A stretch of 64,000 nt of DNA from Squalus acanthias (GCA_030390025.1 CM059449.1:15500001-15564000), one strand, 5' to 3'. Positions 1,786 through 52,705 are shown, counted from the first letter of the stretch. Notes: a model not told the origin generated them from the letters alone. Numbers and translations: made by a program.

Positions 1786-1845
1786 ACTGGTCCGTAAATC
1801 TGTAGGTCACTATTGACAGATTGTATTGTTCCATTTATACTCTAG

Positions 1846-8630: not shown

Positions 8631-11600
8631 TTACTTCACCGAAGCGTACAGCACCGCTGCTCGCTTCACAGGGCACTCAGTTTGATTGCTGTCCTGTAGA
8701 TTCAGCGTGGCGTATTGCAACTTGCCATCTCCTTCTCTCTATTGAGATGAAAGGATTTCAGTGTTGAATAAAATATTGCAAACTGATTATAGCGTCGGGC
8801 CTCAAACCCAGCGCACCAGATGTTGTGCAGTTTCAATGGAATATAATTCAACCCAGTAAACATTCTACATATAATTAGAATATGACTCCACCTATCAAAT
8901 ATTGTTTCCTTAAATAGGATATATGGCGCCGTCCTAAATATTCCTGTCCTTTTAAATATATTTCAGCGAGTCAACGATTGCACGATTTAAGTAACAAGCA
9001 AGGGAAACAGTCAATCTAATTAACACATCATTCTAATGTTAAAATCCATGCATTTAGAACAATTCACACTTAATGAATTCAGGAGCGGTGGGTCAGTCAG
9101 CCTATGGGAAAGATAGATTAACATTTGAGAATAACTGTTCAGGAGCACTTTCCGTTGAAGGCAAAGTGCCAGCGGATTACCCTGTGTTGTTTCTTCCAGG
9201 TTCTGACTGACCTACTTTGCATATCCAGCATTTTCTTTTACGGCTTCAGATTTCCAGTTTTCCTCCTTATCTCGACTTGTCAAAGTAGGTGTATTTTTGC
9301 CTGTGTGCGTGTATATGCCTGGGTGCCCCTATTTTGGGGTCTATTTTAATGTTCCTGTGTGTATCTGGTGCTTTGTTTGAACGTTAGTGGGATGTGGGCG
9401 TCGCTGGCAAGGCCAGCATTTATTGCCCATCCCTAGTTGCCCTTGAGAAGGTGATGGTGAGCCGCCTTCTTGAACCGCTGCAATCAACGTACTCCCACAT
9501 TGTTTTTCATAGCGGCTTTTTACAACTGAGTGGCCATTTTAGAGGACAGTTGAGAGTCAACCACATTGCTATCGGTCTGGAGTCACATATAGGACAGACC
9601 AGGTAAGGACGGCAGATTTCCTTCCCTGAGGGGCATTAGTGAACAAGATAGGCTTTTACAACAATCCCATTGCTTCATGTCACCATTACTGATACTAGCG
9701 TTTTATTCCAGATTTATTTAATTACATTTATATTCTCCAGTTGCTGTGGTGGGGCTTGAACTCAGGTCGCACAGATCATTAGTCCAGGTCTAGATGGATT
9801 ACTAGTCCAGTAACATAAGCACTATGCTACTGTTCCCTATATAGGCTTGGACATGCACTTGCGTATTTGTGTGTGGCTATATGTATTTGCGAGTGTCTTT
9901 GAGAGTGTGTCTTTCTGAGTGTGCAGGTGTTTGAATCCTGGGACTGTAAGATTTCATTTCATGTTTTCCTGGTTGGCTTTCTGTTGAATTATAACTAATA
10001 TTCTAGTCCCGGCTATATAGAATTTCGATTTTCAACTTGCCGCGCCTGTGCATAAAATTGGCGTTTGAGATGGGCCGCACCTGTGCTTCACGCTTTTGTG
10101 GGAAGTTGAGAATCTACCCCACATCTTCAAGAAGAAAAGTTGAGGCCGTCCAACCTCGTTCCGTCTTTAGATTTTTACATCCAACTGAGAGAACTTTTTA
10201 CATGATAATCAACCTGGAAAAGTAAGCAGTAGGTTTAAAAATAACAAAAATAGCCCAAGTCATTGTGCTACATACCCGATTTGTTCTTCGTCACTCAGAG
10301 CTGTCATAATTCCTCTCTATAAAGCATAGAAAAAAGAAAAAAGAAAGACTTGCATTCATTAGCGACTTTCACCACCTCAGGATGTCCCAAAGCGCATCAC
10401 AGCAAATGAAGTACTTTTTAAATTGTAGTCGCTGTTGTAATGTAGGAAACGCGGCAGCCAAGTTACGCACAGCAAGCTCCCACAAACGGCAATCTGACAA
10501 TAGCCAGATAATCTGTTTCAGTGATGTTAATTGAAGAATAAACATTGGCCGGGACACCGGGGAGAACTCCCCTGCTCTTCTTCAAAATAGTACCAAGTGA
10601 TCTTTTACATCCAGCTGAGAGAGCAGACTGGGCCTCGGTCTACTGTCTCATCCAAATGACGGCACCTCCGACAGTGCAACGCTCCCTCAGCACTGCACTG
10701 GGAGTGTCAGATTAGATTTTTTTGTGCTCAAGTCTCTGGAGCGGGATTTGAAACCCACAACCTTCAATGTTTCAGAGGCGAGGGTGCTACCAACTGAGCC
10801 GCAGGAAATGACCCTGAATAATTTAATTTACTTGAACAGTGTATATAATACAATACAACATATTGTGCCATAGATATAGCGCTCTAATGCACTGTGGTAT
10901 AATGCTATACGATACAATATAACATGGTAGAAAACAGGAGAACGCAATAAAATAAAATATACAGTAGGATGTACCGTATTGCACAACAATAAAACGATAC
11001 AATTCGTATGGTCCAACATATAATACACTACGGTGCAATATAAAACATCCTAAGGTTTTTCTGTACGATATAAACGGTATTCATACCAGATTCCTAGGCC
11101 CACTATTTTAACTGTTTACTTTAAACTAATGCAAAAAACAATTTGATATGAGCGCGCCAAGCACTCGTTCGAGAATAGGGTGATATCCAGGCGAATCTAC
11201 TATAATATATGATATATAATACATCATAACATTGAAACGTACTTTTAAATATCATGTAATAATTCATCACAAAAAAATCAGGGTGTGGTAAGAAAATATT
11301 TTAAAATATTATATTATCCATAAACCTTAACACTTTCAGTTGACTTTGTGGCCAAGACGTCTAACATGTGTCACTCAATAGCGGTTCTGGAAGCAAGAGC
11401 AATTGAATCATAGAGTCATACAGCACAGAAGGAGGTCATTCGGCCCAACCTGCCTGTGCCGGCTCTCTGAAAGAGCAATAATTAGTCCCACTCCCCCCTG
11501 CTCTTTCCCCATAGCCCGGAAACATTTCCCGTTTTAAGTATTTATCCAATTCCCTTTTGAAAGATATTATTGAATCTGCTTCCACCGCCCTTTCAGGCAG

Positions 11601-11994
11601 TGTATTTCAGATCACAACAACAGGCTGCGGAAAAAAAAATTCTCCTCATCGCCCCTCGGTTTTTTTTGCCAGTATCTTAAATCTGTGTCCTCTGGTTACC
11701 CACATAATAATCAGACAGAACAAGACTGAACTCCTGGTCAACGGATTATACCTTATAGACAAGAAAATTAACCAGATTATCAATTAAAATCAAATTAAAT
11801 CGAAGGAGTAAGCGGTCGGAGTTTATTAAAAGTGACAGGTTGTTCACGTTTCTTTCTGTCACCCACCTGTTTCATGGATCACTGAGTAGAGCGGATCTGG
11901 ACTGAAGCAAAAGAGGACATCAGAAAATTTAGGCATCCAAAAATAAGAAAGTGGCTTTCTTTATATGAAAATAAATCTATGTAAAGTTACCTGG
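8631..11994 (-). pseudogene. Orphan 3' remnant of inhibitory gene (copy I1): exons 11901-11867, 10316-10276 (in-frame TGA), 8738-8631
   Basis: Homology breaks inside the 22-nt micro-exon at about 11994, and no TM, V or leader follows. The ITIM exon is still intact (LQYATL, VLYASV). Confidence 0.78.
10345..10805 (-). mobile_element. tRNA-derived SINE with L2-like tail (DeuSINE/SacSINE-like); copies at about 22793-23250, 36075-36510, 53318-53766
   Basis: Minus-strand head ggctcagttggtagcac..gggtttcaaatccc and tail ..tgtgggagcttgctgtgcg..cctacattacaacag. The family name is tentative. Confidence 0.7.
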
Positions 11995-12507
11995 AGGCTT
12001 GTTATTCCAGAGTAATACTGGTGTTTTGGGCGATGCGATGATTTTTTCGGTTAAATGAGATGCGTGGTGGCCATTTTAATTCATTTTACTGAGGTTCTGA
12101 ATGTGGGTTTATTACTTTGTCTATTTCACTCCATCTTTCTCTGTGTCTCTCTCCATCTTTCTCTGTTATGTGGCTCGATGTCAAATTTTGTTTTATAACG
12201 CTCCTGTGAAGCGCCCTGGGAGGTTTTACTATATTAAAGGCACTATACAAATACAAGTTGTTGTTGTTGTTGTCTCTCTCCAGCTTTCCCCGTCTCCCTC
12301 TCGAGACAGTTAATATCTAAGAAATGCACACACGGCAATGCGATTTGTCATCATTTTAAATGGTAGACAGAAACATTTCAGAGTACATTTCAATCAAGAT
12401 TAAAGCTGAGATAGAGAGAAAGAGAGAGAGAGAGAGAGAGCAGATGAGTAAAAGAAAGAGAAAGAGGGCCAGAGATGGGGACCTAGATAGGAACAGAGAG
12501 AGAGAGT

Positions 12508-20586: not shown

Positions 20587-20592
20587 TTTATT
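20587..20592 (-). terminator. Candidate poly(A) signal AATAAA of inhibitory gene I2
   Basis: About 0.5 kb past the stop and followed by GT-rich sequence on the minus strand. Retained in the paralogs near 8141 and 47873. A second AATAAA lies at 20725-20730. Confidence 0.45.
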
Positions 20593-21082
20593 GCGAAAAT
20601 ATCAAATACTATATCGGATTATGATGAAATGTAAGGAGTTATGTGATGAAACTAGGCCGAGTGAACAGTAACGAGTATGAACGCTCAACATGTTGGTTTT
20701 CATTTTAACAGCGGCATGAACCAGTTTATTTTCCAGGATAACACGCCCCTTAATATAGGGGACTAATACATGTCATACAAATGTGATAAATGTTCACAAC
20801 TAACACAAAGAGTCTGATGTTAAAGCATTGGAGATTCCAAGCCCTTGTTGCTGAATTATGTGTGGATAAACCTCACTCACTAAGTTAGAGGACAAAACAT
20901 TCGCCTGGAAATTCCCATGGAGGGTTCTCTGATCATCCGCCGTTGAAGATCCCACAGAACGCCCGAGCTTCCGCCCAAGTTACGGCGGGAGAATGGGACA
21001 ACTCTGCGGAAATTCCACCAGTTCTCCATCGCGGGTGGGGGCAGGTGCTTCTCATCATTGGGGTGAAATGTCTCGGCTCCTC

Positions 21083-21190
21083 TTACTTCACCGAAGCGTA
21101 CAGCACCCCTTCTCGCTTTACACGGCGCTCAGTTTGATTGCTGTCCTGAATATTCAGCGTGGCGTATTGCAACTTGTCATCCCCCTCTCT
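21083..21190 (-). CDS. I2 exon 8: terminal exon REGDDKLQYATLNIQDSNQTERRVKREGVLYASVK* with two ITIMs
   Basis: Acceptor tttcatctcaatag|, phase 0. LQYATL and VLYASV both match (I/V/L/S)xYxx(L/V), with the tyrosines 22 aa apart. TAA at 21085-21083. Both motifs are kept in the copies at 8631-8738 and 48322-48429. Confidence 0.85.
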   Translation of the reverse strand, partial: REGDDKLQYATLNIQDSNQTERRVKREGVLYASVK

Positions 21191-24100
21191 CTATTGAGAT
21201 GAAAGTGTTTCAATGTTGAATAAAATATTGTAAACTGAATATAGCGTAGGGCCTCAAACCCAGCGCACCAGATGTTGCGCAGTTTCAATGGAATATAATT
21301 CAACCCAGTAAACATTCTACATATAATTAGCATATGACTCCACCTGTCAGATATTGTTTCGTTAAATAGGATAGATCGCGCCGTCCTAAATATTCCTGTC
21401 CTTTTGAATATATTTCAGCTAGTCAACGATTGCACGATTTAAGTAACAAGCAAGGAAAACCGTCGACCTAATTAACACATCATTATCATTTTAAAATCCA
21501 TGCATTTAGAACAATTCACACTTAATGAATTGAGGAGCAGTGGGTCAGTCAGCATCTGGGAAAGACAGATTAACATTTGGGAATAACTGTTCAGGAGCAC
21601 ATTCCGTTGAAGGCAACGTGCCAACCCACGGTTACCCTCTGTTTTCTCTTCCAGGTGCTGCCTGACCTACTTTGCATATCCAGCATTTTCTGTTACGGCT
21701 TCAGATTTCCTCCTTATCTCGACTTTGTCAAAGTAGGTGTATTTTTGCGTGTGCATGCCTGGGTCCCCCTATTTTGGGGTCCATTTTAATGTTCCTGGGT
21801 GTATCTCGTGCTTTTTGTATTCGTTATTGGGATGTGGGCGTCGCTGGCAAGGCCAGAATTTATTGCCCATCCACAGCAGCCTTTGAGAAGGTGGTGGTGA
21901 GCCGCCTTCTTGAACCGTTGCAGTCAAGGTATTCCCACATTGTTTTTCAAAGCGGCTTTTTACAACTTAGTGGCTATTTTGGAGGAGAGTTGAGAGTCAA
22001 CCACATGGCTGTGGGTCTGGAGTCACATATGGGCCAGACCAGGTAAGGACGGCAGATTTCCTTCCCTAAGGGGCATCAGTGAACAAGGTGGGTTTTTATG
22101 ACAATCCGATAGTTTCATGTCACCATTACTGATACTAGCTTTTTAGTCCAGATTTAATTAATTAAATTTAAATTCCCCAGTTGCTGTGGTGGGGTTTGTA
22201 CTGACGTCGCACGGATCATTAGCCCAGCTCTGATGGATTACTAGTCCAGTAACATCAGCAGTATGCTACCGTTCCCTATATATGCTTGTGCATGCAACCT
22301 GCTTATTTGTGTGTGGCTATATGTATTTGCGAGTGTCTGTGAGAGTGTGTCTTTCTGTGTGTGCAGGTGTTTGAATTCTGGAACTGTTAGGTTTCATTTT
22401 ATGTCTTTCCTGGTTGGCTTTCTGTTGAACTTTAACGAATATTTTAGTCCCGCCTCTCTTCAATTTCGATTTTCAACTTGCCGCGCCTGTGCGTAAAACC
22501 GGCGTTTGGGATGGGCCGCATCTGTGCTTTACGCCTGTGTGGCAAGTTGAGAATCTACCCCATATCTTCAAGAAGAAAAGTTGAGGCCGTCCAACCTCGT
22601 TTCATCTTTAGATTTTTACATCCAACTGAGAGAACTTTTTACATGATAATCTACCGGGAAAAGTAAACAAGAGGTCAGGGTTTAAAAATAACAAAAATAG
22701 CCCAAGTCGTTGTGGTACATACCCGATTTGTTCTTCTGCACTCAGAGCTGTCATTATTCCTGTCTATAAAGCATAGAAAAAAGAAAGAAGAAAGACTTGC
22801 ATTTATATAGCGCCTTTCACCACCTCAGGACGTCCCTAAGCGCTTCACAGCCAATCACGTACTTTTTGAAATGTTGTCGCCGTTGTAATGTAGGAACCGC
22901 GGCAGCCATTTTGCGCACAGCAAGCTCCCACAATCAACAATCTGACAATGGCCAAATAAACTGTTTCAGTGATGTTGATTGAGGGACAAACATTGGTCGG
23001 GACACCGGGGATATCTCCCCTGCTCTTCTTCAAAATAGTGCCAAGTGATATTTTACGTTTAGCTGAGAGAGCAGACGGAGCCTCGGTCTATTCTCACATC
23101 TAAAAGACGGTATCTCTGACAGTGCAACGCTCCCTCAGTACTGCACTGGGAGTGTCAGCCTAGATTTTTGTGCTCAAGTCTCTGGAGTGGGAACTTGAAA
23201 CCCACAGCTTTCAATGTTTCAGAGGCAAGGGTGTTACCAACTGAGCCACGGGAAATGACACTGCCTAATTTAATTTACTTGAACAGTGTATACAGTACAA
23301 TACAACATATTGTGCCTTAGATATAGCGCTGTAATACACTGTGGTATAATGCTATAGGATACAACATAACATAGTATAAAACAGGAGAACGCAATAAAAT
23401 AAAGTATACAGTGGGATGTACCGTATTGCAAAACAATAAACCGATAAAATTAGTATGGTCCAATATATAATACGCTACCACGCAATATAAAACAGCATAA
23501 GGTTCTTCTGTGCGATATAAACGGTGTTCATGTCAGATTCCTACGCCCACTATTTTAACTGTTTACTTTAAACTAATGCAAAAAGCAATTTGATATGAGC
23601 GCGCCAAGCACTTGTACGAGAATAGGGTGATGTCCAGGCTAATCTACTATAATATATGATATATAATACAGCATGACATTGAAACGTACTATTAAATATC
23701 ATGGAATAATTTATCACAAAAAAATCAGCGTGTGGTAAGAAAATATTGGCCCAGAAATTGATCTCGCTCTGTTCCCGCGGGGGTAAGCCTTCCCCGCGCT
23801 GTCTCACCTCGCTTATGCTTTTTCAGATCCAGCTCGCACGAACTTGATGTTCCAGACATCAGCTGTGCTGGGCTTGCGTATCCCAGCGGCGTAGTGAATT
23901 CGTGCGAGCTGTGGGATCACGTGACTCAGTTAGAGCCAATGGCAGCACACCATCTTCCATTCATAAGTCTCAGAGCATGGCTGTGAGACTTATGAATCTT
24001 ACACCCCCCCAAAATAACAGCTAAACCTCAATTAAATTTAAAAAAAAACCATCACATTAATAAAATAAGTATAGTTAATTAAATTAACCATTTTAAATAA

Positions 24101-27100
24101 AAAATTAAATTTTTGAAAAAATTTAAAATCTTTTAAAAAGTTATAAAAATAAACTTACCTGTCTTTAAAGTCTATAAAAAAGATATACCTGTAAAAAAAT
24201 TCAAAAAAATACTTAATTCACTACTTACCTTCTTAAAAGCGGGTCTTACTCCTTTTTACATTTCCAAAATCTTCCCTACTTACCTGCGCGTCCAAAGCAT
24301 GAAGTGCACAGCGTGCGCGCAGCCTGTAGCGCGCACGCGATGCACCCAGGCCCCGCCCCCTTTTCGGAAGAGCAATTGCCGGTTTTCAGCGCATGCGCAG
24401 GGCATGCAGAAAACCGGCAATTGGAGTGGGAATACGCGAGAGTACGCAGTGCGTACTCTCGCGTCCCGGGATCAATTTTCGGCCCATTATAAAATATTGT
24501 ATTATCCATAGACCTTAACACTTCCAATTGACTTTGTGGCCAATATGTGTAACATGTGTCACTCAATAGCGGTTCTGGAAACAAGAGCTTTTGAATCATA
24601 GACTCAAACAGCACAGAATGAGGCCATTCGGCCCAACCTGCCTGTCCCGGCTCTCTGAAAGAGCAATAATTAATCCCACTACCCCTGCTCTTTCCCCATA
24701 GCCCTGAAACAGTTCCCTTTTTAAGTATTTATCCAATTCCCTTTTGAAAGGTATTATTGACTCTGTTTCCACCACCCTTTCAGGCAGCGCATTCCAGATC
24801 ACAACAACTCACTGAGTAAATAAAAATTCTCCTAATTTCCCTTTCGCATTTTTTCCCCAGTATCTTAAATCTGTGTCCTCTGGTTGCCGACAGAATAATC
24901 AGACAGATCAATACTGAACTCATGGTCAACGGATTATACCAGATAGATAAGAAAATTAACCAGATTATCATTAAAATCAAATTAAATCGAATGATTAAGC
25001 GTTCGGAGTTTATTAAAAGTGACAGGTTGTTCACGTTTCTTTCTGTCACCCACCTGTTTCATGGATCACTGCGTAGAGCGGATCTGGACTGAAGCAAAAG
25101 AGGACATCAGAAAATGTAGTCATCCAAAACAATAAAATATATTAAAGGAAAAGAAAGTGGCTTTCTTTTTAAAAAAAAGTAGATCTACGTAAACAGTTAC
25201 CTGGTGGGTTGCTGAAGAGTGACTGTGAGGAGAGAAAGACAAAGACAGAAAAATTAAAGAGCTGAATTTATTGATTATATCTGCAAGAAGCAAATGAAAT
25301 AATTGGTATCGAATGAAGTGAATTAAATTTTGGGGGCAATTTTAACCAAACCCGCGGAGAAACGGACGGGATCGGGTGCAACGTTTTGAAGTCAAATGAG
25401 AGCAATATTGGGCGGGTCTAAACCCGGCGTTCCTCCCGATTCCGTGCGTTTCCCGCCCGGTGAGTTCGGATATAATTACCAGAGAATTTGCCAATCACAT
25501 GAAATTCAGTAGACGTACAATTAGTGCTGTTACCTCTCTTACGATGCCGGCTGATAACAACTATGACTATGATGATGATGATGATCAGGAGGGGAACCGC
25601 TACCGCTGCATAGATCAGTGGTGGGATCATTGGTGCGGACTCGCCGTGTCTGCTCTCTCCACCACCTGTGTGTAAATGTGAAGTTTCTTTTTTGAGACAG
25701 AGCATTCAAGAGCAGGAGAATGGTCACATTGAGATTGAGGATCAGCAAATGGGACACAGATTCCCAATCCCCTTTGACATGCGGGGCTATTTCACACTGG
25801 CATACATCAAACTAGGCCACGGATCAAAAAGCAAAATGTCACCAGTGGGCAACTGGGATATTCCCACCCTGGAAGTAACACTGGGCGAATTTTAATGTCG
25901 GGACGCTTAATGAGTTGGTGCCAGTTTCCTTTCTTTTAAATAGCGGGGAGTGGGGGTGGGGATCGTGTGAGTTCTGTTAACATAGGAACAGGAGGAGGCC
26001 ATTCAGCCCCTCGAGCCTGTTCCACCATTCAATGAGATCATGGCTGATCTGCGACCTAACTCCATATACCCAATATCCCTTAATGCATTTGGTTAACAAA
26101 AATCTATCAATCTTCGATTTAAAATTCACAATTCACCCAGCATCAGTTGTCGTTTGAGGAAGAGAGCTCCAAAGTTTTACCACCCTTTGTGTGTGTAGAA
26201 CTGTTTCCTAATTTCACTCCTGAAATGTCTGGCTCTAATTTTTACACCATGTCCCCTAGTCCTAAACTCCCCAATCAGAGGAAGTAATTTCTCTCTATCT
26301 ACCATCTCTGTTCCCCTTAATATCTCGAGAGTGTCCCGCCCAGTTTTCTTGAATTCACTGGACCCTGGAGATCCAATTGGATCCTGAGCACGAACGAGAA
26401 AATCTTCCCGTCCTATTTGCTGGATGCTTAAGACAAATCGAACATCTGGAAATTAGACGTGCCGACACTGAGTGATCAACGTGGTTCTTCCGCGGACCCA
26501 TCTTTGCATTTTGTTGGCGCGCATTGTTGTAATTTCCATTTACACACACAACTATATCCGTCACTACCTCCATTTACAAGATGACAGTGAAATCTAACGT
26601 ATCATAGACGTGTGGACCGGTTTATTCCTAATATTGTCATGCGGTGATTTCAAGGCTCAAGTGTTGCTCTTATTACTGGGCTCTAGTCTTCGCCTCGCAT
26701 ACTGTAACTGGGTTGACTACTTATCTATAGTCCTACCTAAAATTGTATACAGCAACTGAGTGTAATTAATATCCCCTCCATTCATTTATTTAAAAGATCA
26801 TTCTCGGGATACGGACGACGCTAGCGAGGCGGGCATGTTATTGTCCATCTCTGGTTCATCCCTTGAGAAGGTGGTTGTGGACCGCCTTCTTCTTGAACCG
26901 CTGCAGTCCGGTGTGGTGAAGCTTCTCCCGCAGTGCTGTTCGGGAGGCAGTTCCAGGGTTTTGGAAGGAACAGCGATACAAGTCCAAGTCAGGCTGGTGT
27001 GTGACTTGGAGAGGAACTTGGAGGTGATGGCGTTCCCATGCTTCTGCTGCCCTTGTCCTTCTAGGTGGTGGAGATCGCGAGTTTGGGAGTTCCAATTGAT

Positions 27101-30100
27101 AGAATGGAGAATTTACCTATCCTGACAATATTACCCCTAGAAAAATCCCATATGATTGCGTGCAATTTCATTGGTAAGAATATCTCCACCAATCCAAACT
27201 TACTGTATTGACGCCGTTCCACGATCACTTTTGTCCCGGGTCCGTCTGCTGCAGCGAATCCCACGAGCTCCACTTTGCAGAAATAGAACCCTGTATCTTC
27301 CGGTTTCAGCTGGATTATTCTAATCGAAGCATTTCCCCTCTGGCTGAAATCCTCTTCACTTGCCCCGAACACCCTGCCTCTGTATTCCGCTGTATTGTTG
27401 GAAACTTCATTTCCCTGTTTGTTGCCTCTGTGCCACGTGTAGCTGCCGATTCCTGTGGGACCCTCATATCTACAGAGCAGGTCCGCTGTCTGTCCTGCGG
27501 TTTTGGTGAGAGATTGCGGGCTCTGAATTACGGTGATGTTTCCAACAGTAACTGCTGCAAGTGGGTAAAACAGACCATTTATAAATATACAGGGCACTTC
27601 TTTGCTTCAAAGCACGCCATGGAAGGGCTGGTGGTGGAGGTCGCGAGTTTGGGAGTCCCAATTGATCGAATGGTGAATTTACCTATGCGGACCATATTAC
27701 CCCCTGAAAAATCCCATATGATTGCGTGCAATTTAATTGGTAAGAATATCTCCACCAATCCAAACTTACTGTATTGATGCCGTTCCACGGTCACTGTTGT
27801 CCCGGGTCCCTCTGCTGCAGCGATTCCCACGAGCTCCACTTTGCAGACATAGAACCCGGTATCTTCCGGTTTTAGCTGGATTATTCTAATGGACGCGTCT
27901 CCCCTCTGGCTGAAATCCTCTCCACTTGCCCCGAACACCCTGCCTCTGTATTCCGCTGTATTGTTGGAAACTTCATTTCCCTGTTTGGTGCCTCGGTGCC
28001 ACGTGTAGCTGCCGATTCCTCTGGGACCCTCATATCTGCAGTGCAGGTCCGCTGTCTGTCCCGCGGTTTTGGTGAGTGATTGCGGGCTCTGAATTACGGT
28101 GATGTTTCCAACAGTAACTGCTGCAAGTGGGTAAAACAGACCATTTATAAATATACAGGGCACTTCTTTGCTTTAAAGCAGGCCGTGGAATGGCTGGTTT
28201 TAAGCAAATATTATTTCGGAGGATTTTTGATAAGGTATTCCTGATCTTTAACTTGAGGGAATAAAAACAGAAAATACTGGAAACGCTCAGCAGGCCAGGC
28301 AGCATCTGTGGAGAGAGGAACAGAGTCAACGTTTCAGGTCTATGACCTTTCCTCAGAACTGGAAAAAGTTGGAGATGTACCAGGTCTTCAGCAAATGTAG
28401 GGGCCAGGAAAAGGGGGAAGGGGAGGAAAGAACAAAAGGGAAGGTCTGTGATAGAGTGGAAGGCAGGAGAGATTAAATAACACAAGGGACGATGGGGCAA
28501 GAGAAAAGGAGATGGTAATGGGACAAGTTATGAAACAAAAGATGGGTCTAGAGGGGCTGTACATGGTTAACTTGAGGGCTTTTGGTGCTGGAACTGGAGC
28601 GCCTTTGGTTTTTAGGCGCACTCCTCTGTCAAGTATAGAATGATGCGGAGATGCCGCTGTTGGACTGGGGTGGATGAAAGTGAGAAGTCGGGCAAAACCA
28701 GGTTATAGTCCAACAGCGTTATTTGAAATCACAAGCTTTCGGAGCGCTGCTCCTTCGTCAGGTGAAGTGAAGAAATACATATGGGCACAGCATAAATAGT
28801 CAGAGAACAATGCCAGACGACTACAGTTAATCTTTCTAACTGCCCTTTATCACACCTCGGCAGAGAGACAATCACGGCAATCAAAGGTGTGGATGGTGTC
28901 CAACCAGGTCAGTCAGGAAGACATTACATCAAAGACGATAGCAAAATACAACAAAGACAATGAGGTGGGGTCACAATGGGTCAAATGTGGCAGCTGCTGG
29001 AGTCTGTATGGAAAACTATTTTTTGTTTTACTTTTCTTGCTGGAAATTACAGCAGGCCGCATCTGTGTAGAGAGAACAAGCCAGCGACGACTCGAGTCTG
29101 GATGACTCTACGTCAGGTGGGGTTACAGGTAGCGTGACATGAACCCAAGATCCCGGTTGAGGCCATCCTCATGGGTGCGGAACTTGGCTATCAGTTTCTG
29201 CTCGATGATTTTGCGTTGTCGTGTGTCTCGAAGGCCACCTTGGAGAACGCTTACCCGAAGATCGGAGGCTGAATGTCCTTGACTGCTGAAGTGTTCCCCG
29301 ACTGGGAGGTAACACTCCTGCCTGGCGATTGTTGCGCAGGTGTCCGTTCATACATTGTCGCAGTGTCTGCATGGTCTCGCCGATGTACCATGCTCCGGGG
29401 CATCCTTTCCCGCAACATATGAGGTAGACAACGTTGGCCGAGTCTCATGAGTATGTACCATGTACCTGGTGGGTAGTGTCCTCACGTGTGATGATGGTAT
29501 CTGTGTTAATGATCTGGCATGTCTTGCAGAGGTTGCCGTGGCACTCCAGCAGCTGCCACATTTGACCCCTTGTGACCCCACCTCATTGTCTTTGTTGTAT
29601 TTTGCTATCGTCTTTGATGTAATGTCTTCCTGACTGACCTGGTTGGACACCATCCACACCTTTGATTGCCGTGATTGTCTCTCTGCCGAGGTGTGAGAAA
29701 GGGCAGTTAGAAAGATTAACTGTAGTCGTCTGGCATTGTTCTCTGACTATTTATGCTGTGCCCATATGTATTTCTTCACTTCACCTGACGAAGGAGCAGC
29801 GCTTCGAAAGCTTGTGATTTCAAATAAAGCTGTTGGACTATAACCTGGTGTTGTGCGACTTCTCACTCAAGTATAGAATGGATCTGGTACAAAGTACCTC
29901 TGACCCGTTCCAAATAATAAGCATTCACTTTGATTTCAGTTCTCCCGATATGCTTTCTGTGCAGTTCCCGGTCTCATTTACACTTTGATCGAGGGTGTGA
30001 AATGGGCAATCTCGAAGCCCGATGTTCTCTTCCATTTGGGGGTCATTTTAACTTTGGGTGCTAAATGGGCGAGGTCGGGTCGGCTGCCTGAAATTACAAT

Positions 30101-31748
30101 GGGCGGATGATCCGATGTCGCCCGTTTCAGACGCTCGCGTAAAGTCCAAATCACCTCCAACAAGTGATTTGAAGTTTAATCTCATTAGTCTGATCAGATT
30201 GGAAGTCAGATAGATGCTAAACCCTAGCGACCTTCTCACTAATAATCAGCGGTGACCGGAGAATATGTAAAATTCAAACAGAATATTAATAGTCAAAATA
30301 ATGAATCGATCTGAATGTCCTCAGCTTGTTACATGTAGTGACATTACAAATTGGATGAAAGATTTCCCACTTTGGGTATACCTTGTAAAACCGCCAATAC
30401 CTCTTTAATTTTTTTTCATGATTTTGCTACAACTACGGATCAGAGAAAATAGTCAATGCACTTGCGACCTCGTTCCGCGCAGCAAGCAGCGCTACTCTTG
30501 CCCTGTGCTGATAACTAGAGAAAGTTTGTATCCAATTAAACTGCGAGAAATAATATGAATTGAACAATGAAAATGTCATGCCCTCTGGAAACGGGTGTTT
30601 ACTTGAACACAGCCAGCACTCCAAATATTCACTCCAAGGACTGTTGTGGATACAGAATCTTGACATTTTTGGTAGATATAATATCATAGAATCATAGAAT
30701 AATACAGCAGAGAAGGAGGCAGTTCGGCCCATCGTGTCTGTGCCGGCTGTTTCGAAGAACAATCCAGTTAGTCCCACTCCCCCCTCTCTTTCCCCATATC
30801 ACTGCAATCTTTTTCTCCTTCAAATATTTGTCCAATTCCCTTTTGAAGGCAAATTGAATCTGTATCTACCACCCTATCAGGCAGAGGACAAGGGCAATCT
30901 ATACTTCAGGGAGCAACATACATTATGCTCTACTGGACCAGATACAGTAAACCTCTTTACCCGAGAGCTGATCCGTCTCTCACGTTTACATCTCTCTTTC
31001 TCGCTCTGTCTTCCTCAGTCTCTCTTTCTGTCTCTCACACACACGCACGATTGGAACCTATTTCTCTCTCTCTCTCTCTCGTTTCCTATTCCTATCCATG
31101 ACTTCTTGATTTAACTCGTCTTCCCTCCCACTATTTGCAACCTTGATGCTGTCCTTCGCCATGGGCGATTGGCGCTTCACCTAAATGCCTCAATTCAAAA
31201 TAAGCAACCTCGAAAGCGTTAGCTTCTCTGTGGCGAGCCCTGGTTAACTGGGAGATTGATTATATTACCAGGACATAATTCATTACCACGGCGCTGAGAT
31301 ATTAAGATGGTTAATCTCGCGTCTTTGAGAATTTCCGCACAAACCTGATGTTTTATGATTTGCAGGCGAGCTGGTCATGAATATAAAATTGGTTAAATCC
31401 ACAATCTGGTGCTGTGATCAGCAAATATGGTATATCGGAATAAGATTTAACCAGATACACATATAAATAAGAAAAAAGGATGGGAGGACATCGCTTGGGT
31501 ATTTAATATCTAATTAAGACACACAATATTTCATTAAAGTCATTCCGAAATAATGGAAATTAAATCCAGTCAATTTCAATAAAATGCAGCCACTCCGAAA
31601 CGCCAGCTTAACGCTCAGGCGGCAAGTTGAAAATCTACCCCATATTCTTGAACGGATCTGATGTGTCAGAAATAAGCTTACCGGAGAACATAGCGAATGC
31701 CCAGGTAACTGCAGCCCAATTCATTCTCCCTGTCGGCGGTGATATCAT
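21083..31748 (-). CDS. NCR3: Complete inhibitory-type NKp30/NCR3-like receptor gene (copy I2): leader-V-V-TM-cytoplasmic tail with 2 ITIMs, 8 exons, 368 aa
   Basis: Exons 31748-31682, 28120-27770, 27554-27204, 25665-25534, 25222-25201, 25088-25054, 22763-22723 and 21190-21083. All introns are GT-AG with phases 1,1,1,1,2,1,0. The total of 1107 nt (369 codons) reads without an internal stop. The downstream exons and their splice sites are conserved in the paralogous copies. Confidence 0.8.
22723..22763 (-). CDS. I2 exon 7: 41-nt exon (DRNNDSSECRRTNR)
   Basis: Acceptor ctatgctttatag| and donor TCGG|gtatgt. Phase 1 to 0 exactly bridges exon 6 to the ITIM exon. Copies at 10276-10316 and 53247-53287. 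Confidence 0.68.
23748..24485. mobile_element. Non-autonomous DNA transposon (PIF/Harbinger-like MITE), 738 bp
   Basis: Imperfect TIRs GGCCCAGAAATTGATC / GATCAATTTTCGGCCC and a 3-bp TSD (ATT). Absent from the paralogous sites near 11300 and 54262. Confidence 0.75.
25054..25088 (-). CDS. I2 exon 6: 35-nt exon (SPDPLYAVIHET) with YxxI motif
   Basis: Acceptor cttttgcttcag| and donor ACAG|gtgggt. Only the phase-2 frame is open, as the upstream exon requires. Copies at 11867-11901 (LYSVI) and 54833-54867 (LYTVI). Confidence 0.78.
25201..25222 (-). CDS. I2 exon 5: 22-nt cytoplasmic micro-exon (VTLQQPT)
   Basis: Long polypyrimidine tract ending ctcctcacag| and donor CCAG|gtaact, phase 1 to 2. Conserved at 54978-54999. 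Confidence 0.75.
25534..25665 (-). CDS. I2 exon 4: stalk + uncharged TM (SGGESRHGESAPMIPPLIYAAVAVPLLIIIIIIVIVVISRHRKR)
   Basis: Acceptor tttacacacag|GT and donor AGAG|gtaaca give 132 nt, phase 1-1. The hydrophobic span has no charged residue and is followed by a basic stop-transfer RHRKR. Paralog at 55312-55443. Confidence 0.88.
27204..27554 (-). CDS. NCR3: I2 exon 3: IgV domain V2, tandem duplicate of V1
   Basis: Same splice sites and 351-nt length as V1, repeat period 566 bp, open frame, both Cys, Trp and GPGT retained. About 20 nt and 11 aa differ from V1 by manual count. Confidence 0.88.
27770..28120 (-). CDS. NCR3: I2 exon 2: IgV domain V1 (NKp30-like)
   Basis: NAGNAG acceptor ttgcag|CAG and donor TACA|gtaagt give 351 nt. 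Encodes GIGSYTWHRG..GNEVSNNTAEYRGRV..DTGFYVCKVELVGIAAAEGPGTTVTV, which closely parallels human NKp30 AIGSVTW..GKEVRNGTPEFRGRL..YVCRVEVLG..GNGTRLVV. Confidence 0.9.
28643..29866. mobile_element. Penelope-like fold-back insertion in I2 intron 1: 324-bp inverted repeats around a GIY-YIG fragment, 14-bp TSD
   Basis: Arms 28680-29003 and 29543-29866 are near-perfect reverse complements. The minus-strand spacer reads ..ANVVYLICCGKGCPGAWYIGETMQTLRQCMNGH. TSD TCAAGTATAGAATG at 28629-28642 and 29867-29880, with an empty site near 57860. Confidence 0.85.
28729..28765 (-). ncRNA. Minimal type-I hammerhead ribozyme motif (Penelope-associated)
   Basis: TCAC-CTGACGA-A-GGAGC-agc-GCTCC-GAAAGCTT-GTGA: CUGANGA and GAAA core, stem I TCAC/GTGA, 5-bp stem II, and palindromic AAGCTT in place of stem III. 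The mirror copy is at 29781-29817 (+). Confidence 0.65.
31682..31748 (-). CDS. I2 exon 1: signal peptide MISPPTGRMNWAAVTWAFAMFS(A)
   Basis: ATG at 31748 (alternative in-frame ATG at 31724), hydrophobic core, phase-1 donor TCCG|gtaagc. Joins AVTVG-NITV of the V exon to complete a plausible signal peptide. Confidence 0.72.
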
Positions 31749-47300: not shown

Positions 47301-49421
47301 CAAGTTTGCGGCTCAAGGCCCACTCCAGGAGTTGAGCACATAAAGTAGGCGAATCTCCATTGCAACACTAAGGGAGTCTGGGAGTTAAGCCTGGGAGGAG
47401 CAAAAGGGAACGTTTGGTTGGGAACTTGGCACCGCAATAACGCTGGATTCTTCTTTTATCAAAATCATTGGAAGGAAATTCCAGCGTTGGAACCTTCCCA
47501 TGTGATTTTCCTTCATGATGTGCCCCGGCGATGCTGAACGCCTAGACAGTGAAGACAAAAATTCTACCCGCATCTTTCAGGAAGTAGTTAGGTGTGCCGA
47601 TCTATGAAACGTCCTGCCAAGTAATAATTTCTCGGGGAGGTGCTTCTGCCGATCTCCTGCCGTGACTTCTCTGGAAGTTAGGTAAACCCCGCTTTAGCTA
47701 TTACACGCTTCTCTGAGTTCCGCCGATGTTCCGCCGACGTTACCGCAGGAGAGTGGGAGAACCCAGCAGAAGATATTTCCCCCCCTTGAGTTTAACATGG
47801 AACATTCATTTTAATAAAAGATACAACAGAAAATCAACAGAACAACCTGACATGGGTCAACTGAGAAGAACTTTTATTGTGAAAATGTCAAATGCTTTAC
47901 AGGATTATGATGAAATGTAAGGAGTTATGTGATGAAACTAGGCCGTGTGAACAATAACGAGTACGAACGCTCAACATGTTGGTTTTCATTTTAACAATGG
48001 CATGAACCAATTTATTTTCTAGGATAGCCCGCCCCTTAATATAGGGGACTAATACATTTCATACAAATGTGATAAATGTTCACAACTAACACTAAAGAGT
48101 CTGTTGTTAAAGCTCACTAACTAAGTTAGAGGATAAAATATTCGCCTGGAAATTCCCATGGAGGGTTCTCCGATCATCCGCCGTTGAAGATGCCACAGAA
48201 CCCCCGAGCAACCGCCCAAGTTACTGCGGGAGATCGGGACAACTCTGCGGAAATTCCACCATTGTCCATCGCGGGTGGGGGCAGGTGCGTCTCAGCTTTG
48301 GGGTGAAATTTGTCGGCTCTCTTACTTCACCAAAGCGTACAGCACCGCTTCTCGCTTCACACGGCGCTCAGTTTGATCGCTGTCCTGAACATTCAGCGTG
48401 ACGTATTGCAACTTGTCATCTCCCTCTTTCTAGTGAGATGAAAGTTTTTCAGTGTTGAATCAAATATTGTAAACTGAATAGAGCATAGGGCCTCAAACCC
48501 AGCGCACCAGATGTTGTGCAGTTTCAATGGAATATAATTCAACCCAGTAAACATTCTACTTAAAGTTAAAATATGACTCCACCTATCAAATATTGTTTCG
48601 TTAAATAGGATAGATCGCGCCGTCTTAAATATTCCTGTCTTTTTGAATATAATTCAGCGAGTCAACGATTGCACGAGTAACAAGCAAGGGAAACAATTGA
48701 CGTAATTAACACATCAGTATAATGTTAAAATTCATGCCTTTAGAACAATTCACACTAAATGAATTCAGGAGCAGTGGGTCAGTCAGCATCTGGGCAAGGC
48801 AGATTAACATTTGGGAATAACTGTTCAGGAGCACTTTCCATTGAAGGCAAAGAACCAGCCCACCGGTTACCCTGTGTTTTCTCATCCAGGTGCTGACTGA
48901 TCTACTTTGCATATCCAGCATTTTCTGTTGCGGCTTCAGATTTCCTCCTTATCTCGACTTGTCAAAGTAGGTGTATTTTTGCGTGTGTATGCCTGGGTGA
49001 CCCAATTTTGGGGTCTATTTTAATGTACCTAGGTGTATCTAGTGCTTTTTTTATTCATTCATGGGATGTGGGCGTCGCTGGCAAGACCAGCATGTATTGC
49101 CCATCGCTAGTTGCCCTTGAGAAGGTGGTGGTGAGTCGCGTTCTTGAACCGCTGCAGTCAAGGTACTCCCACATTGTTTTTCTTAGCGGTTTTTTACAAC
49201 TGAGTGGCCATTTTAGAGAACAGTTGAGAGTCAACCACATTGCTGTGGGTCTGGAGTCACATTTAGGACAGACCAGGTAAGGACGGCAGATTTCCTTCCC
49301 TAAGGGGCATTAGTGAACAAGATGGGTTTTTACGACAATCCGATAGTTTCATGTCACCATTACTGATACAAGCTTTTTAGTGCAGATTTTTTCATTAAAT
49401 TTAAATTCCCCAGTTGCTGTG

Positions 49422-52400
49422 TCATAGTCATAGTGTCATAGAGTTATACAGCACAGAAAGAGTCCCTTCGGCCCATCATGTCCGCGCCGGCCATCAAGCC
49501 CTATCTATTCTAATCCCATTTTCCAGCACATGAACCGTTGCCTTGTATGCTATGGCGTTTCAAGTGCTCATCTAAATGCTTCTTGTTTGTTGTGAGGATT
49601 CCTGCCTCTACCACCCTTTCAGGCAGTGAGTTCCAGATTCCAACCACCCTCTGGGTGAAAAACTTTTTCCTAAAATCCCCTCTGAACCTCCTGCCCCTTA
49701 CCCTGAAACTATGCCCCCTGGTTATTGACCCCTCTACTCAGGGGAAAAGTTCCTTTCCATCTACCATATCCATGCCCCTCATAATTTTGTACACCTCAAT
49801 TAGATCCCCCCCTCAGCATTCTCTGCTCTAAGGAAAATAACCCCAGCCTGTCCAGTCTCTCTTCACAGCTGAAGCGCTCCAGCCCAGGTAACATCCTGGT
49901 GAATCTCCTCTGCACCCTCTGCAATACAATAACATCCTTCCTGTTGTGTGGCGACCAGAATTGCACACAGAATTCCAGCTGAGACCTAACTACTGCTTTG
50001 TACAGCTCCATCATAACCTCCCTGCTCTTATATTCTATGCCTCGGCTAATGAAGGCAAGTATCCCATATGCCTTTTTAACCACCTTATCTACCTGTCCTG
50101 CTGCCTTCAGGGATCTATGTACATGCACATCAAGTTCCCTCTGATCCTCTGTCCTTCCTCGTGTCCTACCATTCATTGCGTATTCCCTTGCCTTGTTAGT
50201 CCTCCCAAAATGCATCACCTCACACTTTTCAGGGTTAAATTCCATTTGCCACAGTGCTGCCCATCTAACCAACCCGTCTATATCCTCCTGTAGCCTGAGG
50301 ATTCCCTCCTCGCTATTTACCACTCCACCAATTTACGTGTCATCAGCGAATTTACTGATCACACCTCTTACATTCATTTCTAAATTATTAATATACACTA
50401 CAAACAGCAAAGGACCCAGCACCGGGCTCTTACCTTCTTGACCAGTCTCCCATGTGGGACTTTGTCAAAAGCCTTACTGATGTCCATGTAGACCATATCA
50501 ACTGCACTACCCTCATCCACAAACCTAGTCACCCTCTCGAAAAATTCAATCAAATTGTTTAAACATGATCTCCCCCTGACAAAGCCATGCTGACTATCCT
50601 TGATTAATCCTTGCCTCTCCAAGTGGAGACTAATTCTGTCCTTCAGAATTTTTTCCAATAATTTCCCTGCCACTGATGTTAGGCTCACTGGCCTGTAATA
50701 CCCTGGATGAACCCTACTAAGCTTCTTGAATAATGGTACTACGTTAGGTGTTCTCCAGTCCTCTGGCACATCTCTTGTGGCCAGAGAGGTTCTGAAAATT
50801 TGTGTCAGAGCCCCTGCAATCTCCTCCCTTACCTCACACAGCAGCCTGGGATACATATCGTCTGGACCTGGGGATTTATCCACTTTTAAGCCCGCTAAAA
50901 CCGCTAGTACCTCCTCTTTCTCAATACTAATTTGTTCAAGTATATCACAATCCCCCTGCCTGATTTCTATGCCTACATCGGCCTTCTCCAGAGTGAACCC
51001 AGGTGCAATATATTCATTTCAAACCTCACTTACATCTTCCAGCTCTACACACAGATTGCCACTTTGGTCCCTAATGGGCCCTACACTTTCCCTGGTTATC
51101 CTCTTGCGCTTAATATACTTATGAAGCACCTTGGGATTTTCCTTTATTTTGCCCACTAGTGTTTTTTCATGCCCCCTCTTCGCTCCCCTAATTTCTTTTT
51201 TAAGTACCCCCCTGCACTTTCTGTACTCCACTAGGGCTTCCACTGTTTTTAGTCCATTGTATCTGCCAAAAGCCTCCCTTTTTTTCCTAATAAATTCCTG
51301 TATATCCCTTGACATCCAGGGTTCCCTAGGCTTGTTGGTCCCACCCTTGACCTTTATGGGAACATGTTGACGTTGTACTCTCTCTATTTCCTTTCTGAAA
51401 TACTCCCATTGCTCGGATGTGGATTTTCCTACAAGTAGCTGATCCCAGTCTACTTTGGCCAGATCCTGCCTTATATTAAAATCGGCCTTCCCCCAATTTA
51501 GAACCTTTATTTCCGTTCAATCTTTGTCCTTTTCCATGACTACCTTAAATCTCACCGAATTATTGGTCACCGTCACCAAAATGCTCTCCTACTGACACTT
51601 CTACCACTTGCCCGGCTACATTCCCTAGAATTAGGTCCAGCACCGCCCCCTCTCTTGTAGAGCTTTCTACATCCTGGCTCAAAAATCTCTCCTGGATGCA
51701 CTTTAAGAATTCGGCACCCTCTAAGCCTTTCACACTCTGACTATCCCAGTTAAAATTGGGGAAGTTGAAATCCCCCCCTATTATTTCTATACTTCTCAGG
51801 GATTTGCCTACATATCTGTTGCTCTATCTCCCCCTGACTGTTTGGGGGCGTTTAGTACACTCCCAGCAAAGTGCTTGCCCCCTTTTTGCTTTTCAGTTCT
51901 GCCCAGATGGCCTCATTAGAGGAACCTGCTAAGATATCATCCCTCCTTACAGCAGTAATTGACTCCATGATTAATATTGAGACACCCGCTCCACTTTTAC
52001 ACTTCCCTCTGCCTCGCCTGAAGATTCTATACCACGGAATATTGAGCTGCCAGTCCTACCAGGGCGACACGGTGGCATAGTGGTTAGCACTGATGCCTCA
52101 CAGCACCAAGGACCCGAGTTCGAATCTGACCTCGGGTGACTGTCTGTGTGGAGTTTGCACATTCTCCCCGTGTCTGCGTGGGTTTGCTCTGGTTTCCTCC
52201 CACAGTCCAAAAATGTGCGGGTTAGGTTGATTTGGCTATGATAAATTAACCCTTAGTGTTAGGGGGGGGGGTTAAATATGTGGGGTTGTGGGGATAGGAT
52301 GGGATATGTTAGGGGAAATTAAATACGTGGGGTTACAGGGGTAGGGTGGGATATGTGTACTGTGGGGATTAAAGCAGGGACGGGGTACTGGATTTAGATG

Positions 52401-52705
52401 ATCAGCCATGATCGTATTGAATGGTGGAGCAGGTCGACTGGCCGACTCCTGCTCCGAGATTCTATGTTTACCCCTCCCTCAACCATGTCTCTGTGATAGC
52501 AACAATATCATACTCCCATGTGTTCATCAACAACTTCAATTCATCTGCCTTACTCGCAAGACTCCTTGTATTAAAATAAATGCCATCCAACCTTGCCATA
52601 CTCCCTTGTGCCGTTACATATGTGCTCTGCCTTTCAGGCTGACTTGTTTTTTCCTCTATATTTGGCTCTGCATCACCCCCTACTATAGCTCCACTCCGTA
52701 TCCCG
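49422..52705 (-). mobile_element. About 3.3-kb CR1-type LINE inserted in the last intron of I3, same subfamily as 32297-34200, with a nested SINE
   Basis: RT motifs KAFDKVPH and QHGFVRGRSC, with frameshifts. It splits an older repeat that is contiguous near 22185 and 9745. Confidence 0.9.
52061..52466 (+). mobile_element. HE1/V-SINE-type tRNA-derived SINE nested in the CR1
   Basis: tRNA-like head (ggtggcatagtggttagc..gagttcgaatc), V-domain tgtgtggagtttgcacattctccccgtgtctgcgtgggtt and a LINE-derived tail. Confidence 0.85.

What the first reader, a model, noticed from the sequence alone, without database searches (positions are those of the whole stretch)
21083..25665. Hidden three-tyrosine inhibitory tail assembled from 22-, 35- and 41-nt micro-exons
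The tail is not recoverable from the ORF track, which only reads through the TM intron. The predicted tail is RHRKR-VTLQQPTSPDPLYAVIHETDRNNDSSECRRTNR-REGDDKLQYATLNIQDSNQTERRVKREGVLYASVK*. Exon phases 1-2-1-0 close exactly. All three Tyr motifs are preserved in all three copies while neighbouring residues vary (YAVI/YSVI/YTVI, YATL/YVTL, YASV/YALV). The two ITIMs are 22 residues apart, which suits tandem-SH2 phosphatases. This points to an ITIM-bearing, checkpoint-like NKp30 relative.
Basis: partly seen in the sequence, partly recalled or inferred. Interest (0 to 1): 0.8.

Follow-up and report, generated by a model that had tools for sequence, protein, structure and literature searches.

The report
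Shark NKp30-like receptor with dual-ITIM tail
A shark gene of the NKp30 immune-receptor family really does build its inner tail from three tiny exons plus a last exon carrying two inhibitory tyrosine motifs, but the same design is already annotated in other sharks, lungfish and salamanders.

Summary
On the minus strand, gene A has a TM exon (25534-25665), micro-exons of 22, 35 and 41 nt (25201-25222, 25054-25088, 22723-22763) and a terminal exon (21083-21190).

The exons are not chance. e41 and e35 rank first among 706 candidate AG..GT exon/frame pairs when scored against homologue tails. The V domain is NKp30-type.

Annotated proteins of horn shark, bamboo shark and catshark carry the same tail.

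Only the last two tyrosines are canonical ITIMs. Their 22-residue spacing recurs in sturgeon, bichir and lungfish NCR3-like proteins.

The first tyrosine has Pro at -2 and is lost in two shark species.

The "three copies" argument is weak:
- Copy C is a tail-only fragment with an in-frame TGA in e41.
- Copy B's V exon has a 1-bp deletion.
- pN/pS is about 1.

Two first-reader notes in this scan describe the same design about 1.6 Mb away in this genome.

Verdict: real, and a new member of a known kind.

The parts
31682..31724 (-). Gene A leader exon. It starts at an ATG, translates MNWAAVTWAFAMFS plus one base, and is followed by the donor gtaagc.
   Evidence: Matched by tblastn to the leaders of P0001, P0002 and P0004. 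Sequence and frame are shown. The borders were worked out by hand from those calls.
27770..28120 (-). Gene A V exon, upstream copy (V2). It is about 351 nt and phase 1-1. Coordinates are approximate.
   Evidence: Open frame. Pfam V-set, E = 4e-12. 71% identical to nurse-shark NCR3. Flanks are shown.
27204..27554 (-). Gene A V exon, downstream copy (V1). It is a tandem duplicate of V2. Coordinates are approximate.
   Evidence: The 569-bp tandem unit is 94% identical between copies. Pfam V-set, E = 2.5e-12. The top four PDB matches are NKp30.
25534..25665 (-). Gene A stalk/transmembrane exon. It has no charged residue in the hydrophobic stretch and ends in the basic anchor RHRKR. It leaves the frame in phase 1.
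   Evidence: It aligns to the TM regions of P0001 and P0003.
25201..25222 (-). The 22-nt micro-exon (e22). It encodes (V)TLQQPT.
   Evidence: AG/GT borders with a long pyrimidine tract. TLQQP is identical in bamboo-shark P0004.
25054..25088 (-). The 35-nt micro-exon (e35). It encodes (S)PDPLYAVIHET. Its membrane-proximal tyrosine is not a canonical ITIM.
   Evidence: It is the second-ranked distinct exon among 706 candidates.
22723..22763 (-). The 41-nt micro-exon (e41). It encodes (D)RNNDSSECRRTNR.
   Evidence: It ranks first of 706 candidates. SECRRTNR is identical in P0004.
21083..21190 (-). Terminal coding exon with two canonical ITIMs (LQYATL and VLYASV), Tyr-Tyr distance 22, and stop codon TAA. 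Tandem AG acceptors (atAGAGAGAG) could trim one or two residues.
   Evidence: tblastn to P0002 gives E = 2e-7.
20725..20730 (-). AATAAA poly(A)-signal-like hexamer, 352 nt after the stop codon.
48322..57354 (-). Copy B. The TM exon (55312-55443), e22 (54978-54999), e35 (54833-54867), e41 (53247-53287) and terminal exon (48322-48429) are all open. The V exon (about 57034-57354) has a 1-bp deletion.
8631..12001 (-). Copy C, a tail-only fragment. It holds e35 (11867-11901), e41 (10276-10316, with an in-frame TGA) and the terminal exon (8631-8738). It has no e22, TM or V exon.

Best explanation
Gene A (minus strand, about 20.7-31.7 kb) is an apparently intact member of the shark NCR3 (NKp30) gene family.

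Structure. It encodes a type I membrane protein. The parts in order are a signal peptide, one or two NKp30-type VJ-like V domains, a short stalk, an uncharged transmembrane helix and a tail of about 75 residues. The tail comes from three micro-exons (22, 35 and 41 nt) and a terminal exon.

Mechanism. The terminal exon carries two canonical ITIMs with tyrosines 22 residues apart. The inferred (not shown) mechanism is the usual one for such receptors. Ligand engagement leads to phosphorylation of the two ITIM tyrosines by Src-family kinases. The tandem SH2 domains of SHP-1/SHP-2, or the SH2 domain of SHIP, then dock and damp activating signals.

Splicing logic. None of the micro-exons is a multiple of three. 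Skipping any single one meets a stop within eight codons, and reading through the e35 donor meets a stop after two codons. Splicing can therefore decide whether the ITIMs are translated. The pair e22+e35 (57 nt) is an in-frame removable cassette that carries the non-ITIM tyrosine.

Shown here: exon anatomy, reading frame, family membership of the V domain, the ITIM pattern and its conservation across species.

Inferred: expression, phosphorylation, phosphatase recruitment and the inhibitory outcome.
For: - Exon borders and phases are established.
- The micro-exons are the best of 706 candidates against homologue tails.
- The same exon-by-exon tail layout appears in horn shark XP_067865395.1, bamboo shark XP_043533718.1 and catshark XP_038671257.1.
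- Nurse-shark NCR3 QTT61898.1 contains the e22 and e35 equivalents.
- Horn-shark isoform X3 diverges exactly at the e35/e41 junction and then reads e41 in another frame (and frame 2).
- The V domain is NKp30-type.
- Both ITIMs pass [ILVS]xYxx[ILV], and the 22-residue spacing is exact in 10 of the 23 sequences examined. These 10 include sturgeon, bichir and lungfish NCR3-like proteins. A spacing of 21-23 occurs in 14 of the 23.
- The TM helix of A has no charged residue.
- The leader, both V exons and a poly(A) signal are intact.
- The stops produced by exon skipping can be read from the frames and the exon sequences.
Against:
- The supporting homologues with the full tail are computer gene models, and I could not inspect their RNA support.
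- The one GenBank-submitted sequence (nurse shark) stops right after the e35 equivalent and has no ITIMs.
- Within the window the tail shows no purifying selection. pN/pS is 1.07 for the A against B tail and 0.89 with the TM exon included.
- Two of the three copies look defective.
- The 23 sequences used for the spacing count were hand-picked for having tail matches, so the fractions are not an unbiased census.
Confidence: 0.75

Rival explanations
1. The dominant product is a short-tailed receptor, and the ITIM exon is used rarely or never. Transcripts would end after e35 by reading through its donor, which gives two codons and then TGA. Or they would skip a micro-exon and stop early, as in the nurse-shark NCR3 record that ends three residues after the e35 equivalent.
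For: - P0001 (QTT61898.1) ends ..LYADMHDRGE with no ITIMs.
- In gene A the sequence after the e35 donor reads GGT GGG TGA.
- Horn-shark isoform X3 loses the ITIMs through a frame change after e35.
- No RNA evidence was obtained here.
Against: - The terminal exon with both ITIMs and the exact 22-residue spacing is kept in four other shark species and in sturgeon, bichir and lungfish. That is hard to explain if it were not translated.
- The splice sites of e41 and of the terminal exon are canonical and are kept in copies A and B.
Confidence: 0.15
2. The whole local cluster, gene A included, is decaying, and gene A is an unexpressed recent duplicate. The tail motifs would then survive only because the copies are young.
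For: - pN/pS is about 1 between copies.
- Copy C is truncated and carries a stop.
- Copy B has a V-exon frameshift.
- Gene A carries an unusual tandem V-exon duplication and a 740-bp intron insertion that is absent from B and C.
Against: - Every exon of gene A is open, with intact splice sites, start codon, stop codon and poly(A) signal.
- Both duplicated V exons are open and phase-symmetric.
- The 1-bp deletion in B lies in a short C run and could be an assembly error.
Confidence: 0.08
3. The micro-exons are chance AG..GT-bounded open stretches and the reader's splice model is an artefact.
For: Short exons are easy to invent. There are 706 open candidate exon/frame pairs in the interval.
Against:
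- SECRRTNR and TLQQP are identical in bamboo shark.
- The phases close.
Confidence: 0.02

Closest known systems
Horn shark (Heterodontus francisci) XP_067865395.1 / XP_067865393.1 / XP_067865396.1. NCBI names them SIRP-alpha-like (isoforms X1 and X2) and NCR3-like (isoform X3).
   Same: - The V domain is 68-70% identical.
- The TM segment is uncharged.
- The tail has the same order of segments: ATRQQPA, then the e35 equivalent, then the e41 equivalent, then the terminal exon.
- It ends ..VQYATL..(22)..VLYATVK*, with the same four residues after the last Tyr.
   Different: - The e35-equivalent tyrosine is Asn.
- There is an extra 10-residue stretch before the terminal exon.
- Isoform X3 has an additional exon after e35 that was not found in the window.
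- These are predicted models, not experimental sequences.
Whitespotted bamboo shark (Chiloscyllium plagiosum) XP_043533718.1, and catshark (Scyliorhinus canicula) XP_038671257.1.
   Same: Both have the same micro-exon-sized tail segments. TLQQP and SECRRTNR are identical in the bamboo shark. Both have two tyrosine motifs 22 apart.
   Different: - In bamboo shark the second motif has Met at -2, and the tail runs 26 residues further.
- The catshark model is a fusion of two neighbouring genes. Its first motif has Met at -2, and the e35 tyrosine is Cys.
Nurse shark NCR3, QTT61898.1 (P0001).
   Same: It is the closest V domain, at 71% identity. It has an uncharged TM segment and equivalents of e22 and e35 (ATPEQLES / MSNPLYADMHD).
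   Different: It ends three residues after the e35 equivalent and has no ITIM. Its proximal motif reads NPLY..M rather than DPLY..I.
Mammalian NKp30 (NCR3; PDB 3NOI, 3PV6, 6YJP, 9FWW).
   Same: The V domain is VJ-like. It is the best solved-structure match, with E = 1.1e-13 over 107 residues, and it shares the ..YxCxVE..G..G.GT..VVE end of the domain.
   Different: Mammalian NCRs have a basic TM residue that pairs with ITAM adaptors, and their tails have no signalling motif of their own (passage of PMC6514059). Gene A has no charged TM residue and carries two ITIMs. It would therefore signal in the opposite direction.
NCR3-like proteins of lungfish (XP_043938374.1), sturgeon (XP_058852856.1), bichir (XP_039626090.1), newt (XP_078502137.1) and axolotl (XP_069489054.1).
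   Same: Each has an NKp30-type V domain, a single TM segment and a C-terminal pair of ITIMs. The spacing is 22 (lungfish, sturgeon, bichir) or 23 (newt, axolotl). The first motif is often xQYAxLNL.
   Different: The membrane-proximal parts of the tails are unrelated in sequence.
SIRP-alpha-type and other tandem-ITIM receptors (for example hit P0148).
   Same: Each has a V-type ectodomain, an uncharged TM segment and paired ITIMs about 24 residues apart.
   Different: - It is a different V-domain family. SIRP structures score 1e-7 to 1e-8, against 1e-13 for NKp30.
- It has four motifs instead of two.

Membership tests
NKp30 / NCR3 family | A single V-set Ig domain of the non-rearranging VJ type, ending in a G-x-G-T..V J-like strand | tested here: met
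   Pfam V-set, E = 2.5e-12. The domain ends ..DGPGTKVIVE. The motif definition is recalled, but it is consistent with a passage of PMC11599192.
NKp30 / NCR3 family | Closer to NKp30 than to other V-domain families | tested here: met
   The top 4 of the 60 listed PDB matches are all NKp30 (E = 1.1e-13 to 2.1e-13). The next best is an antibody at 1e-9, and SIRP is at 6e-8. The nearest database protein is nurse-shark NCR3, at 71% identity.
NKp30 / NCR3 family | A basic residue in the TM helix for pairing with CD3-zeta or FcR-gamma (the mammalian form) | tested here: not met
   The TM segment of A is IPPLIYAAVAVPLLIIIIIIVIVVIS, with no K, R, D or E. The feature itself is taken from a passage of PMC6514059.
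NKp30 / NCR3 family | Linkage to the MHC and binding of a B7H6-type ligand | not testable with these tools
   The window holds only NKp30-like genes and repeats. MHC linkage of shark NCR3 is recalled from the abstract of Kinlein et al. 2021, a paper that is not held.
ITIM-bearing inhibitory receptor | At least one cytoplasmic (I/V/L/S)xYxx(I/V/L) motif, typically two about 20-30 residues apart | tested here: met
   LQYATL and VLYASV are 22 residues apart in A, and LQYVTL and VLYALV are 22 apart in B. The consensus is recalled. PMC6514059 calls ILYHTV an ITIM.
ITIM-bearing inhibitory receptor | The membrane-proximal tyrosine (e35) is also an ITIM | tested here: not met
   PLYAVI has Pro at -2, as do PLYSVI and PLYTVI in the other copies. 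The tyrosine is absent in horn shark and catshark.
ITIM-bearing inhibitory receptor | The motifs are translated: mRNA joins the TM exon to the terminal exon in frame | tested here: inconclusive
   The frame closes on paper, and other species' models use the same layout.
ITIM-bearing inhibitory receptor | Tyrosine phosphorylation and recruitment of SHP-1, SHP-2 or SHIP | not testable with these tools
   This needs biochemistry.

The most novel reading that the evidence does not exclude
The terminal exon may be the ancestral NKp30 tail. It has two ITIMs with a fixed 22-residue tyrosine spacing, and the first often reads xQYAxLNL. It is kept from sharks through sturgeon, bichir and lungfish, and with 21-23 spacing in salamanders and a gecko. 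If so, NKp30 began as an inhibitory receptor, and mammals later turned it into an activating one by losing this exon and gaining a basic TM residue.

In sharks, the frame-shifting micro-exons (22, 35 and 41 nt; the e22+e35 pair is in frame) would act as a splicing switch between ITIM-bearing and tail-less isoforms of one gene.

I could not establish whether this has been said in print. The two key papers (Flajnik et al. 2012; Kinlein et al. 2021) are not held. Searches found no statement of it.
Probability: 0.35. Interest if true: 0.5.

Novelty: new member of a known kind. Interest (0 to 1): 0.27.

Why it matters
NKp30 is the one natural-killer receptor traceable across jawed vertebrates, and in mammals it is an activating receptor. 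This locus adds another shark member whose wiring is inhibitory. It also shows the exact exon anatomy: three frame-shifting micro-exons ahead of a dual-ITIM exon. That anatomy explains why ORF-based annotation misses such tails.

The practical value is for annotation of shark immune gene clusters. It also gives a testable idea that splicing of the micro-exons turns the inhibitory tail on or off.

It does not reveal a new kind of system. Equivalent proteins are already in public annotation for several sharks, basal bony fishes, lungfish and amphibians.

Tried and rejected
Junction evidence therefore stayed unchecked.

I used isoform differences instead.

3. Literature.
- Flajnik et al. 2012 (PMC3709836) and Kinlein et al. 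2021 (PMC8273117) are not held. What I say of them is recalled from their titles and abstracts or taken from reference lists.
- Searches found nothing on ITIM tails of non-mammalian NKp30.
- I read passages only of PMC12227049, PMC10450919, PMC12272517, PMC6514059, PMC11599192 and PMC5371597.
- PMC12272517 says human NKp30 isoforms carry an ITAM or an ITIM. That conflicts with PMC6514059, and I did not rely on it.
- Supplements were not requested.

4. Tail-only word search. Searching with P0002 residues 190-268 found only P0002 itself.

5. Terminal-exon profile. Alignment A2 was meant to give a terminal-exon-only profile, but it became a 257-position full-length profile. One search is therefore a whole-protein search, not a tail search, and most of its 511 hits are merely V domains.

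6. Paralogue conservation as evidence of selection. Rejected because pN/pS is 0.89-1.07 for A against B, 0.53 for A against C and 0.96 for B against C, all on very few sites.

7. The extra exon of horn-shark isoform X3 was not found in the window.

8. A crude hydrophobicity scan found no TM exon for the plus-strand V genes, nor one upstream of copy C.

9. The joined spliced model was never searched.

Full report
**What is in the sequence**

The finding lies on the minus strand. Reading 20000-26500 and extracting the candidate exons gives five coding pieces for the copy I call gene A:
- a stalk/transmembrane exon at 25534-25665
- micro-exons at 25201-25222 (22 nt), 25054-25088 (35 nt) and 22723-22763 (41 nt)
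- a terminal coding exon at 21083-21190 that ends in TAA

Every internal border is AG|...|GT. The acceptors of e22, e35 and e41 follow long pyrimidine tracts.

The TM exon leaves one base. Adding 22, 35 and 41 nt gives phases 2, 1 and 0, and the terminal exon is 36 codons.

The three split codons read Val, Ser and Asp.

An AATAAA lies 352 nt past the stop.

Each exon was handled separately.

**Is it more than chance?**

I enumerated all AG..GT-bounded segments of 15-60 nt that are open in some frame between the TM and terminal exons. This gave 706 exon/frame pairs, with 23700-24500 left out. I scored each against the tails of four homologues.

The best unrelated candidate scores 29. e22 is too short to stand out this way, but its TLQQP is identical in bamboo-shark P0004. 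The terminal exon matches horn-shark P0002 at E = 2e-7.

**What the gene is**

Upstream on the same strand are a leader exon (31682-31724) and two tandem V exons (about 27204-27554 and 27770-28120). The V exons sit in a 569-bp duplication that is 94% identical between copies.

The V domain is Pfam V-set. Its four best solved-structure matches are all human NKp30 at about 1e-13, and the next family scores 1e-9. The nearest database protein is nurse-shark NCR3, at 71% identity.

Gene A is therefore an NCR3-family gene. Its TM helix has no charged residue. Mammalian NCRs carry a basic TM residue and have no signalling motif of their own (passage of PMC6514059).

**Independent support for the tail**

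Three public gene models carry the same succession of tail segments and the same ending:
- horn shark XP_067865395.1
- whitespotted bamboo shark XP_043533718.1
- catshark XP_038671257.1, which is a fused model

These are shown.

The nurse-shark NCR3 record QTT61898.1 contains the e22 and e35 equivalents but stops three residues later.

Horn-shark isoform X3 departs from X1 and X2 exactly at the e35/e41 junction. It then reads the e41 equivalent in another frame (compare frame 2).

**The motifs**

With the pattern [ILVS]xYxx[ILV], the terminal exon has two canonical ITIMs. They are LQYATL and VLYASV in A and C, and LQYVTL and VLYALV in B. The tyrosines are 22 residues apart.

The membrane-proximal tyrosine is in PLYAVI, with Pro at -2, so it is not an ITIM. 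In other sharks that position reads YAEM or YADM, or it is Asn (horn shark) or Cys (catshark). "Three-tyrosine inhibitory tail" therefore overstates the case. It is a dual-ITIM tail with a variable extra tyrosine.

**A wider pattern**

A full scan of 1.84 billion representatives gave 511 hits at E <= 0.001. The query alignment unintentionally produced a full-length profile.

I fetched 17 hits whose match reached the tail and looked up names for 20. Proteins that NCBI calls NCR3 or NCR3-like have an NKp30-type V domain and C-terminal ITIM pairs in these species: lungfish, sturgeon, caecilian, newt, axolotl, a frog and horn shark.

I measured spacing in 23 sequences: 3 window exons plus 20 proteins that I chose for having tail matches.
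- Exactly 22 in 10 of the 23: the three window copies, four shark proteins, lungfish, bichir and sturgeon.
- A spacing of 21-23 in 14 of the 23.
- The others have 24-37, or only one motif.

By a crude TM rule, 19 of the 153 proteins on file had two or more ITIM matches after the last TM segment. Two of those 19 are inflated by Ig-domain YxC motifs.

The design "NKp30-type V domain plus dual ITIM" is therefore old and already annotated.

**The three copies**

Self-comparison shows that A, B and C are about 88-90% identical over several kilobases, introns included.
- Copy C's homology stops at 12001, inside e22. It has no TM or V exon, and its e41 has an in-frame TGA ahead of both ITIMs.
- Copy B has all five tail exons open, but its V exon lacks one base just before the GxGT motif, relative to both V exons of A. 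This may be real or an assembly error.
- pN/pS is 1.07 for the A against B tail and 0.89 with the TM exon included.

Survival of the tyrosines in three young copies, two of them probably dead, is therefore not evidence of selection. The cross-species data are.

**Splicing logic (inferred)**

None of 22, 35 or 41 is a multiple of three.
- Skipping e22 alone meets a stop after seven codons.
- Skipping e35 alone meets a stop after three codons.
- Skipping e41 alone meets a stop after four codons.
- Reading through the e35 donor meets a stop after two codons.

These follow from the frames and the sequences.

The pair e22+e35 is 57 nt and begins and ends in phase 1, so it is an in-frame cassette. 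Together with the nurse-shark short form and horn-shark isoform X3, this suggests that splicing decides whether the ITIMs are made.

**What is missing**

There is no RNA evidence for this locus. That place lies in a 740-bp insertion present in A but not in B or C. I left it out of later searches and did not study it.

The two papers most likely to describe shark NCR3 tails are not held. Seven library searches found nothing on the point.

Earlier first-reader notes of this scan describe the same design about 1.6 Mb away in this genome, and related cassettes nearby. They are unchecked.

**Verdict**

The interpretation as an ITIM-bearing NKp30 relative is supported for two of the three tyrosines. 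Expression and function remain untested. The kind is already known from public annotation, so this is a new member of a known kind and of modest interest.

Noticed in passing
window 27064-28198 (minus): There is a tandem 569-bp duplication, 94% identical between copies, each copy holding a complete open V exon with identical splice flanks. Both exons are about 351 nt and phase 1-1. Gene A could therefore make a one-V or a two-V receptor.
   Followed up: partly
window 1842-2180 (+) and 41387-41725 (+): There are two plus-strand V exons of a second, divergent NKp30-like type, about 33% identical to the shark NCR3 proteins. The one at 41.4 kb has an in-frame stop (..DSDF*YCEV). A crude hydrophobicity scan found no TM exon downstream of either.
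   Followed up: partly
window 34451-34513 (minus): A short open stretch (MRANGTNGKLLSGNCYRLLVQ) matches the N-terminal extension of horn-shark isoform X2, with 62% identity over 21 residues and E = 0.006. It may be an alternative upstream first exon of gene A.
   Followed up: no
window 32380-34072 (minus); also 49426-51211: There are LINE-type reverse-transcriptase ORFs (304 and 173 aa) between the leader and the possible upstream exon of gene A. A copy 90-92% identical sits in the e41-terminal intron of copy B.
   Followed up: no
window 23747-24486: A segment of about 740 bp is present in the e35-e41 intron of gene A but absent from copies B and C.
   Followed up: no
window 28679-29003 and 29543-29867: A 325-bp inverted repeat, 97.8% identical, lies in the leader-V intron of gene A.
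   Followed up: no
window 28117-28122 and 27551-27556 (minus), leader/V junction: There is a tandem CAG|CAG acceptor at the start of the V exon. Isoforms X1 and X2 of both horn shark and bamboo shark differ by exactly one Ala at this junction. This suggests conserved NAGNAG alternative splicing.
   Followed up: partly
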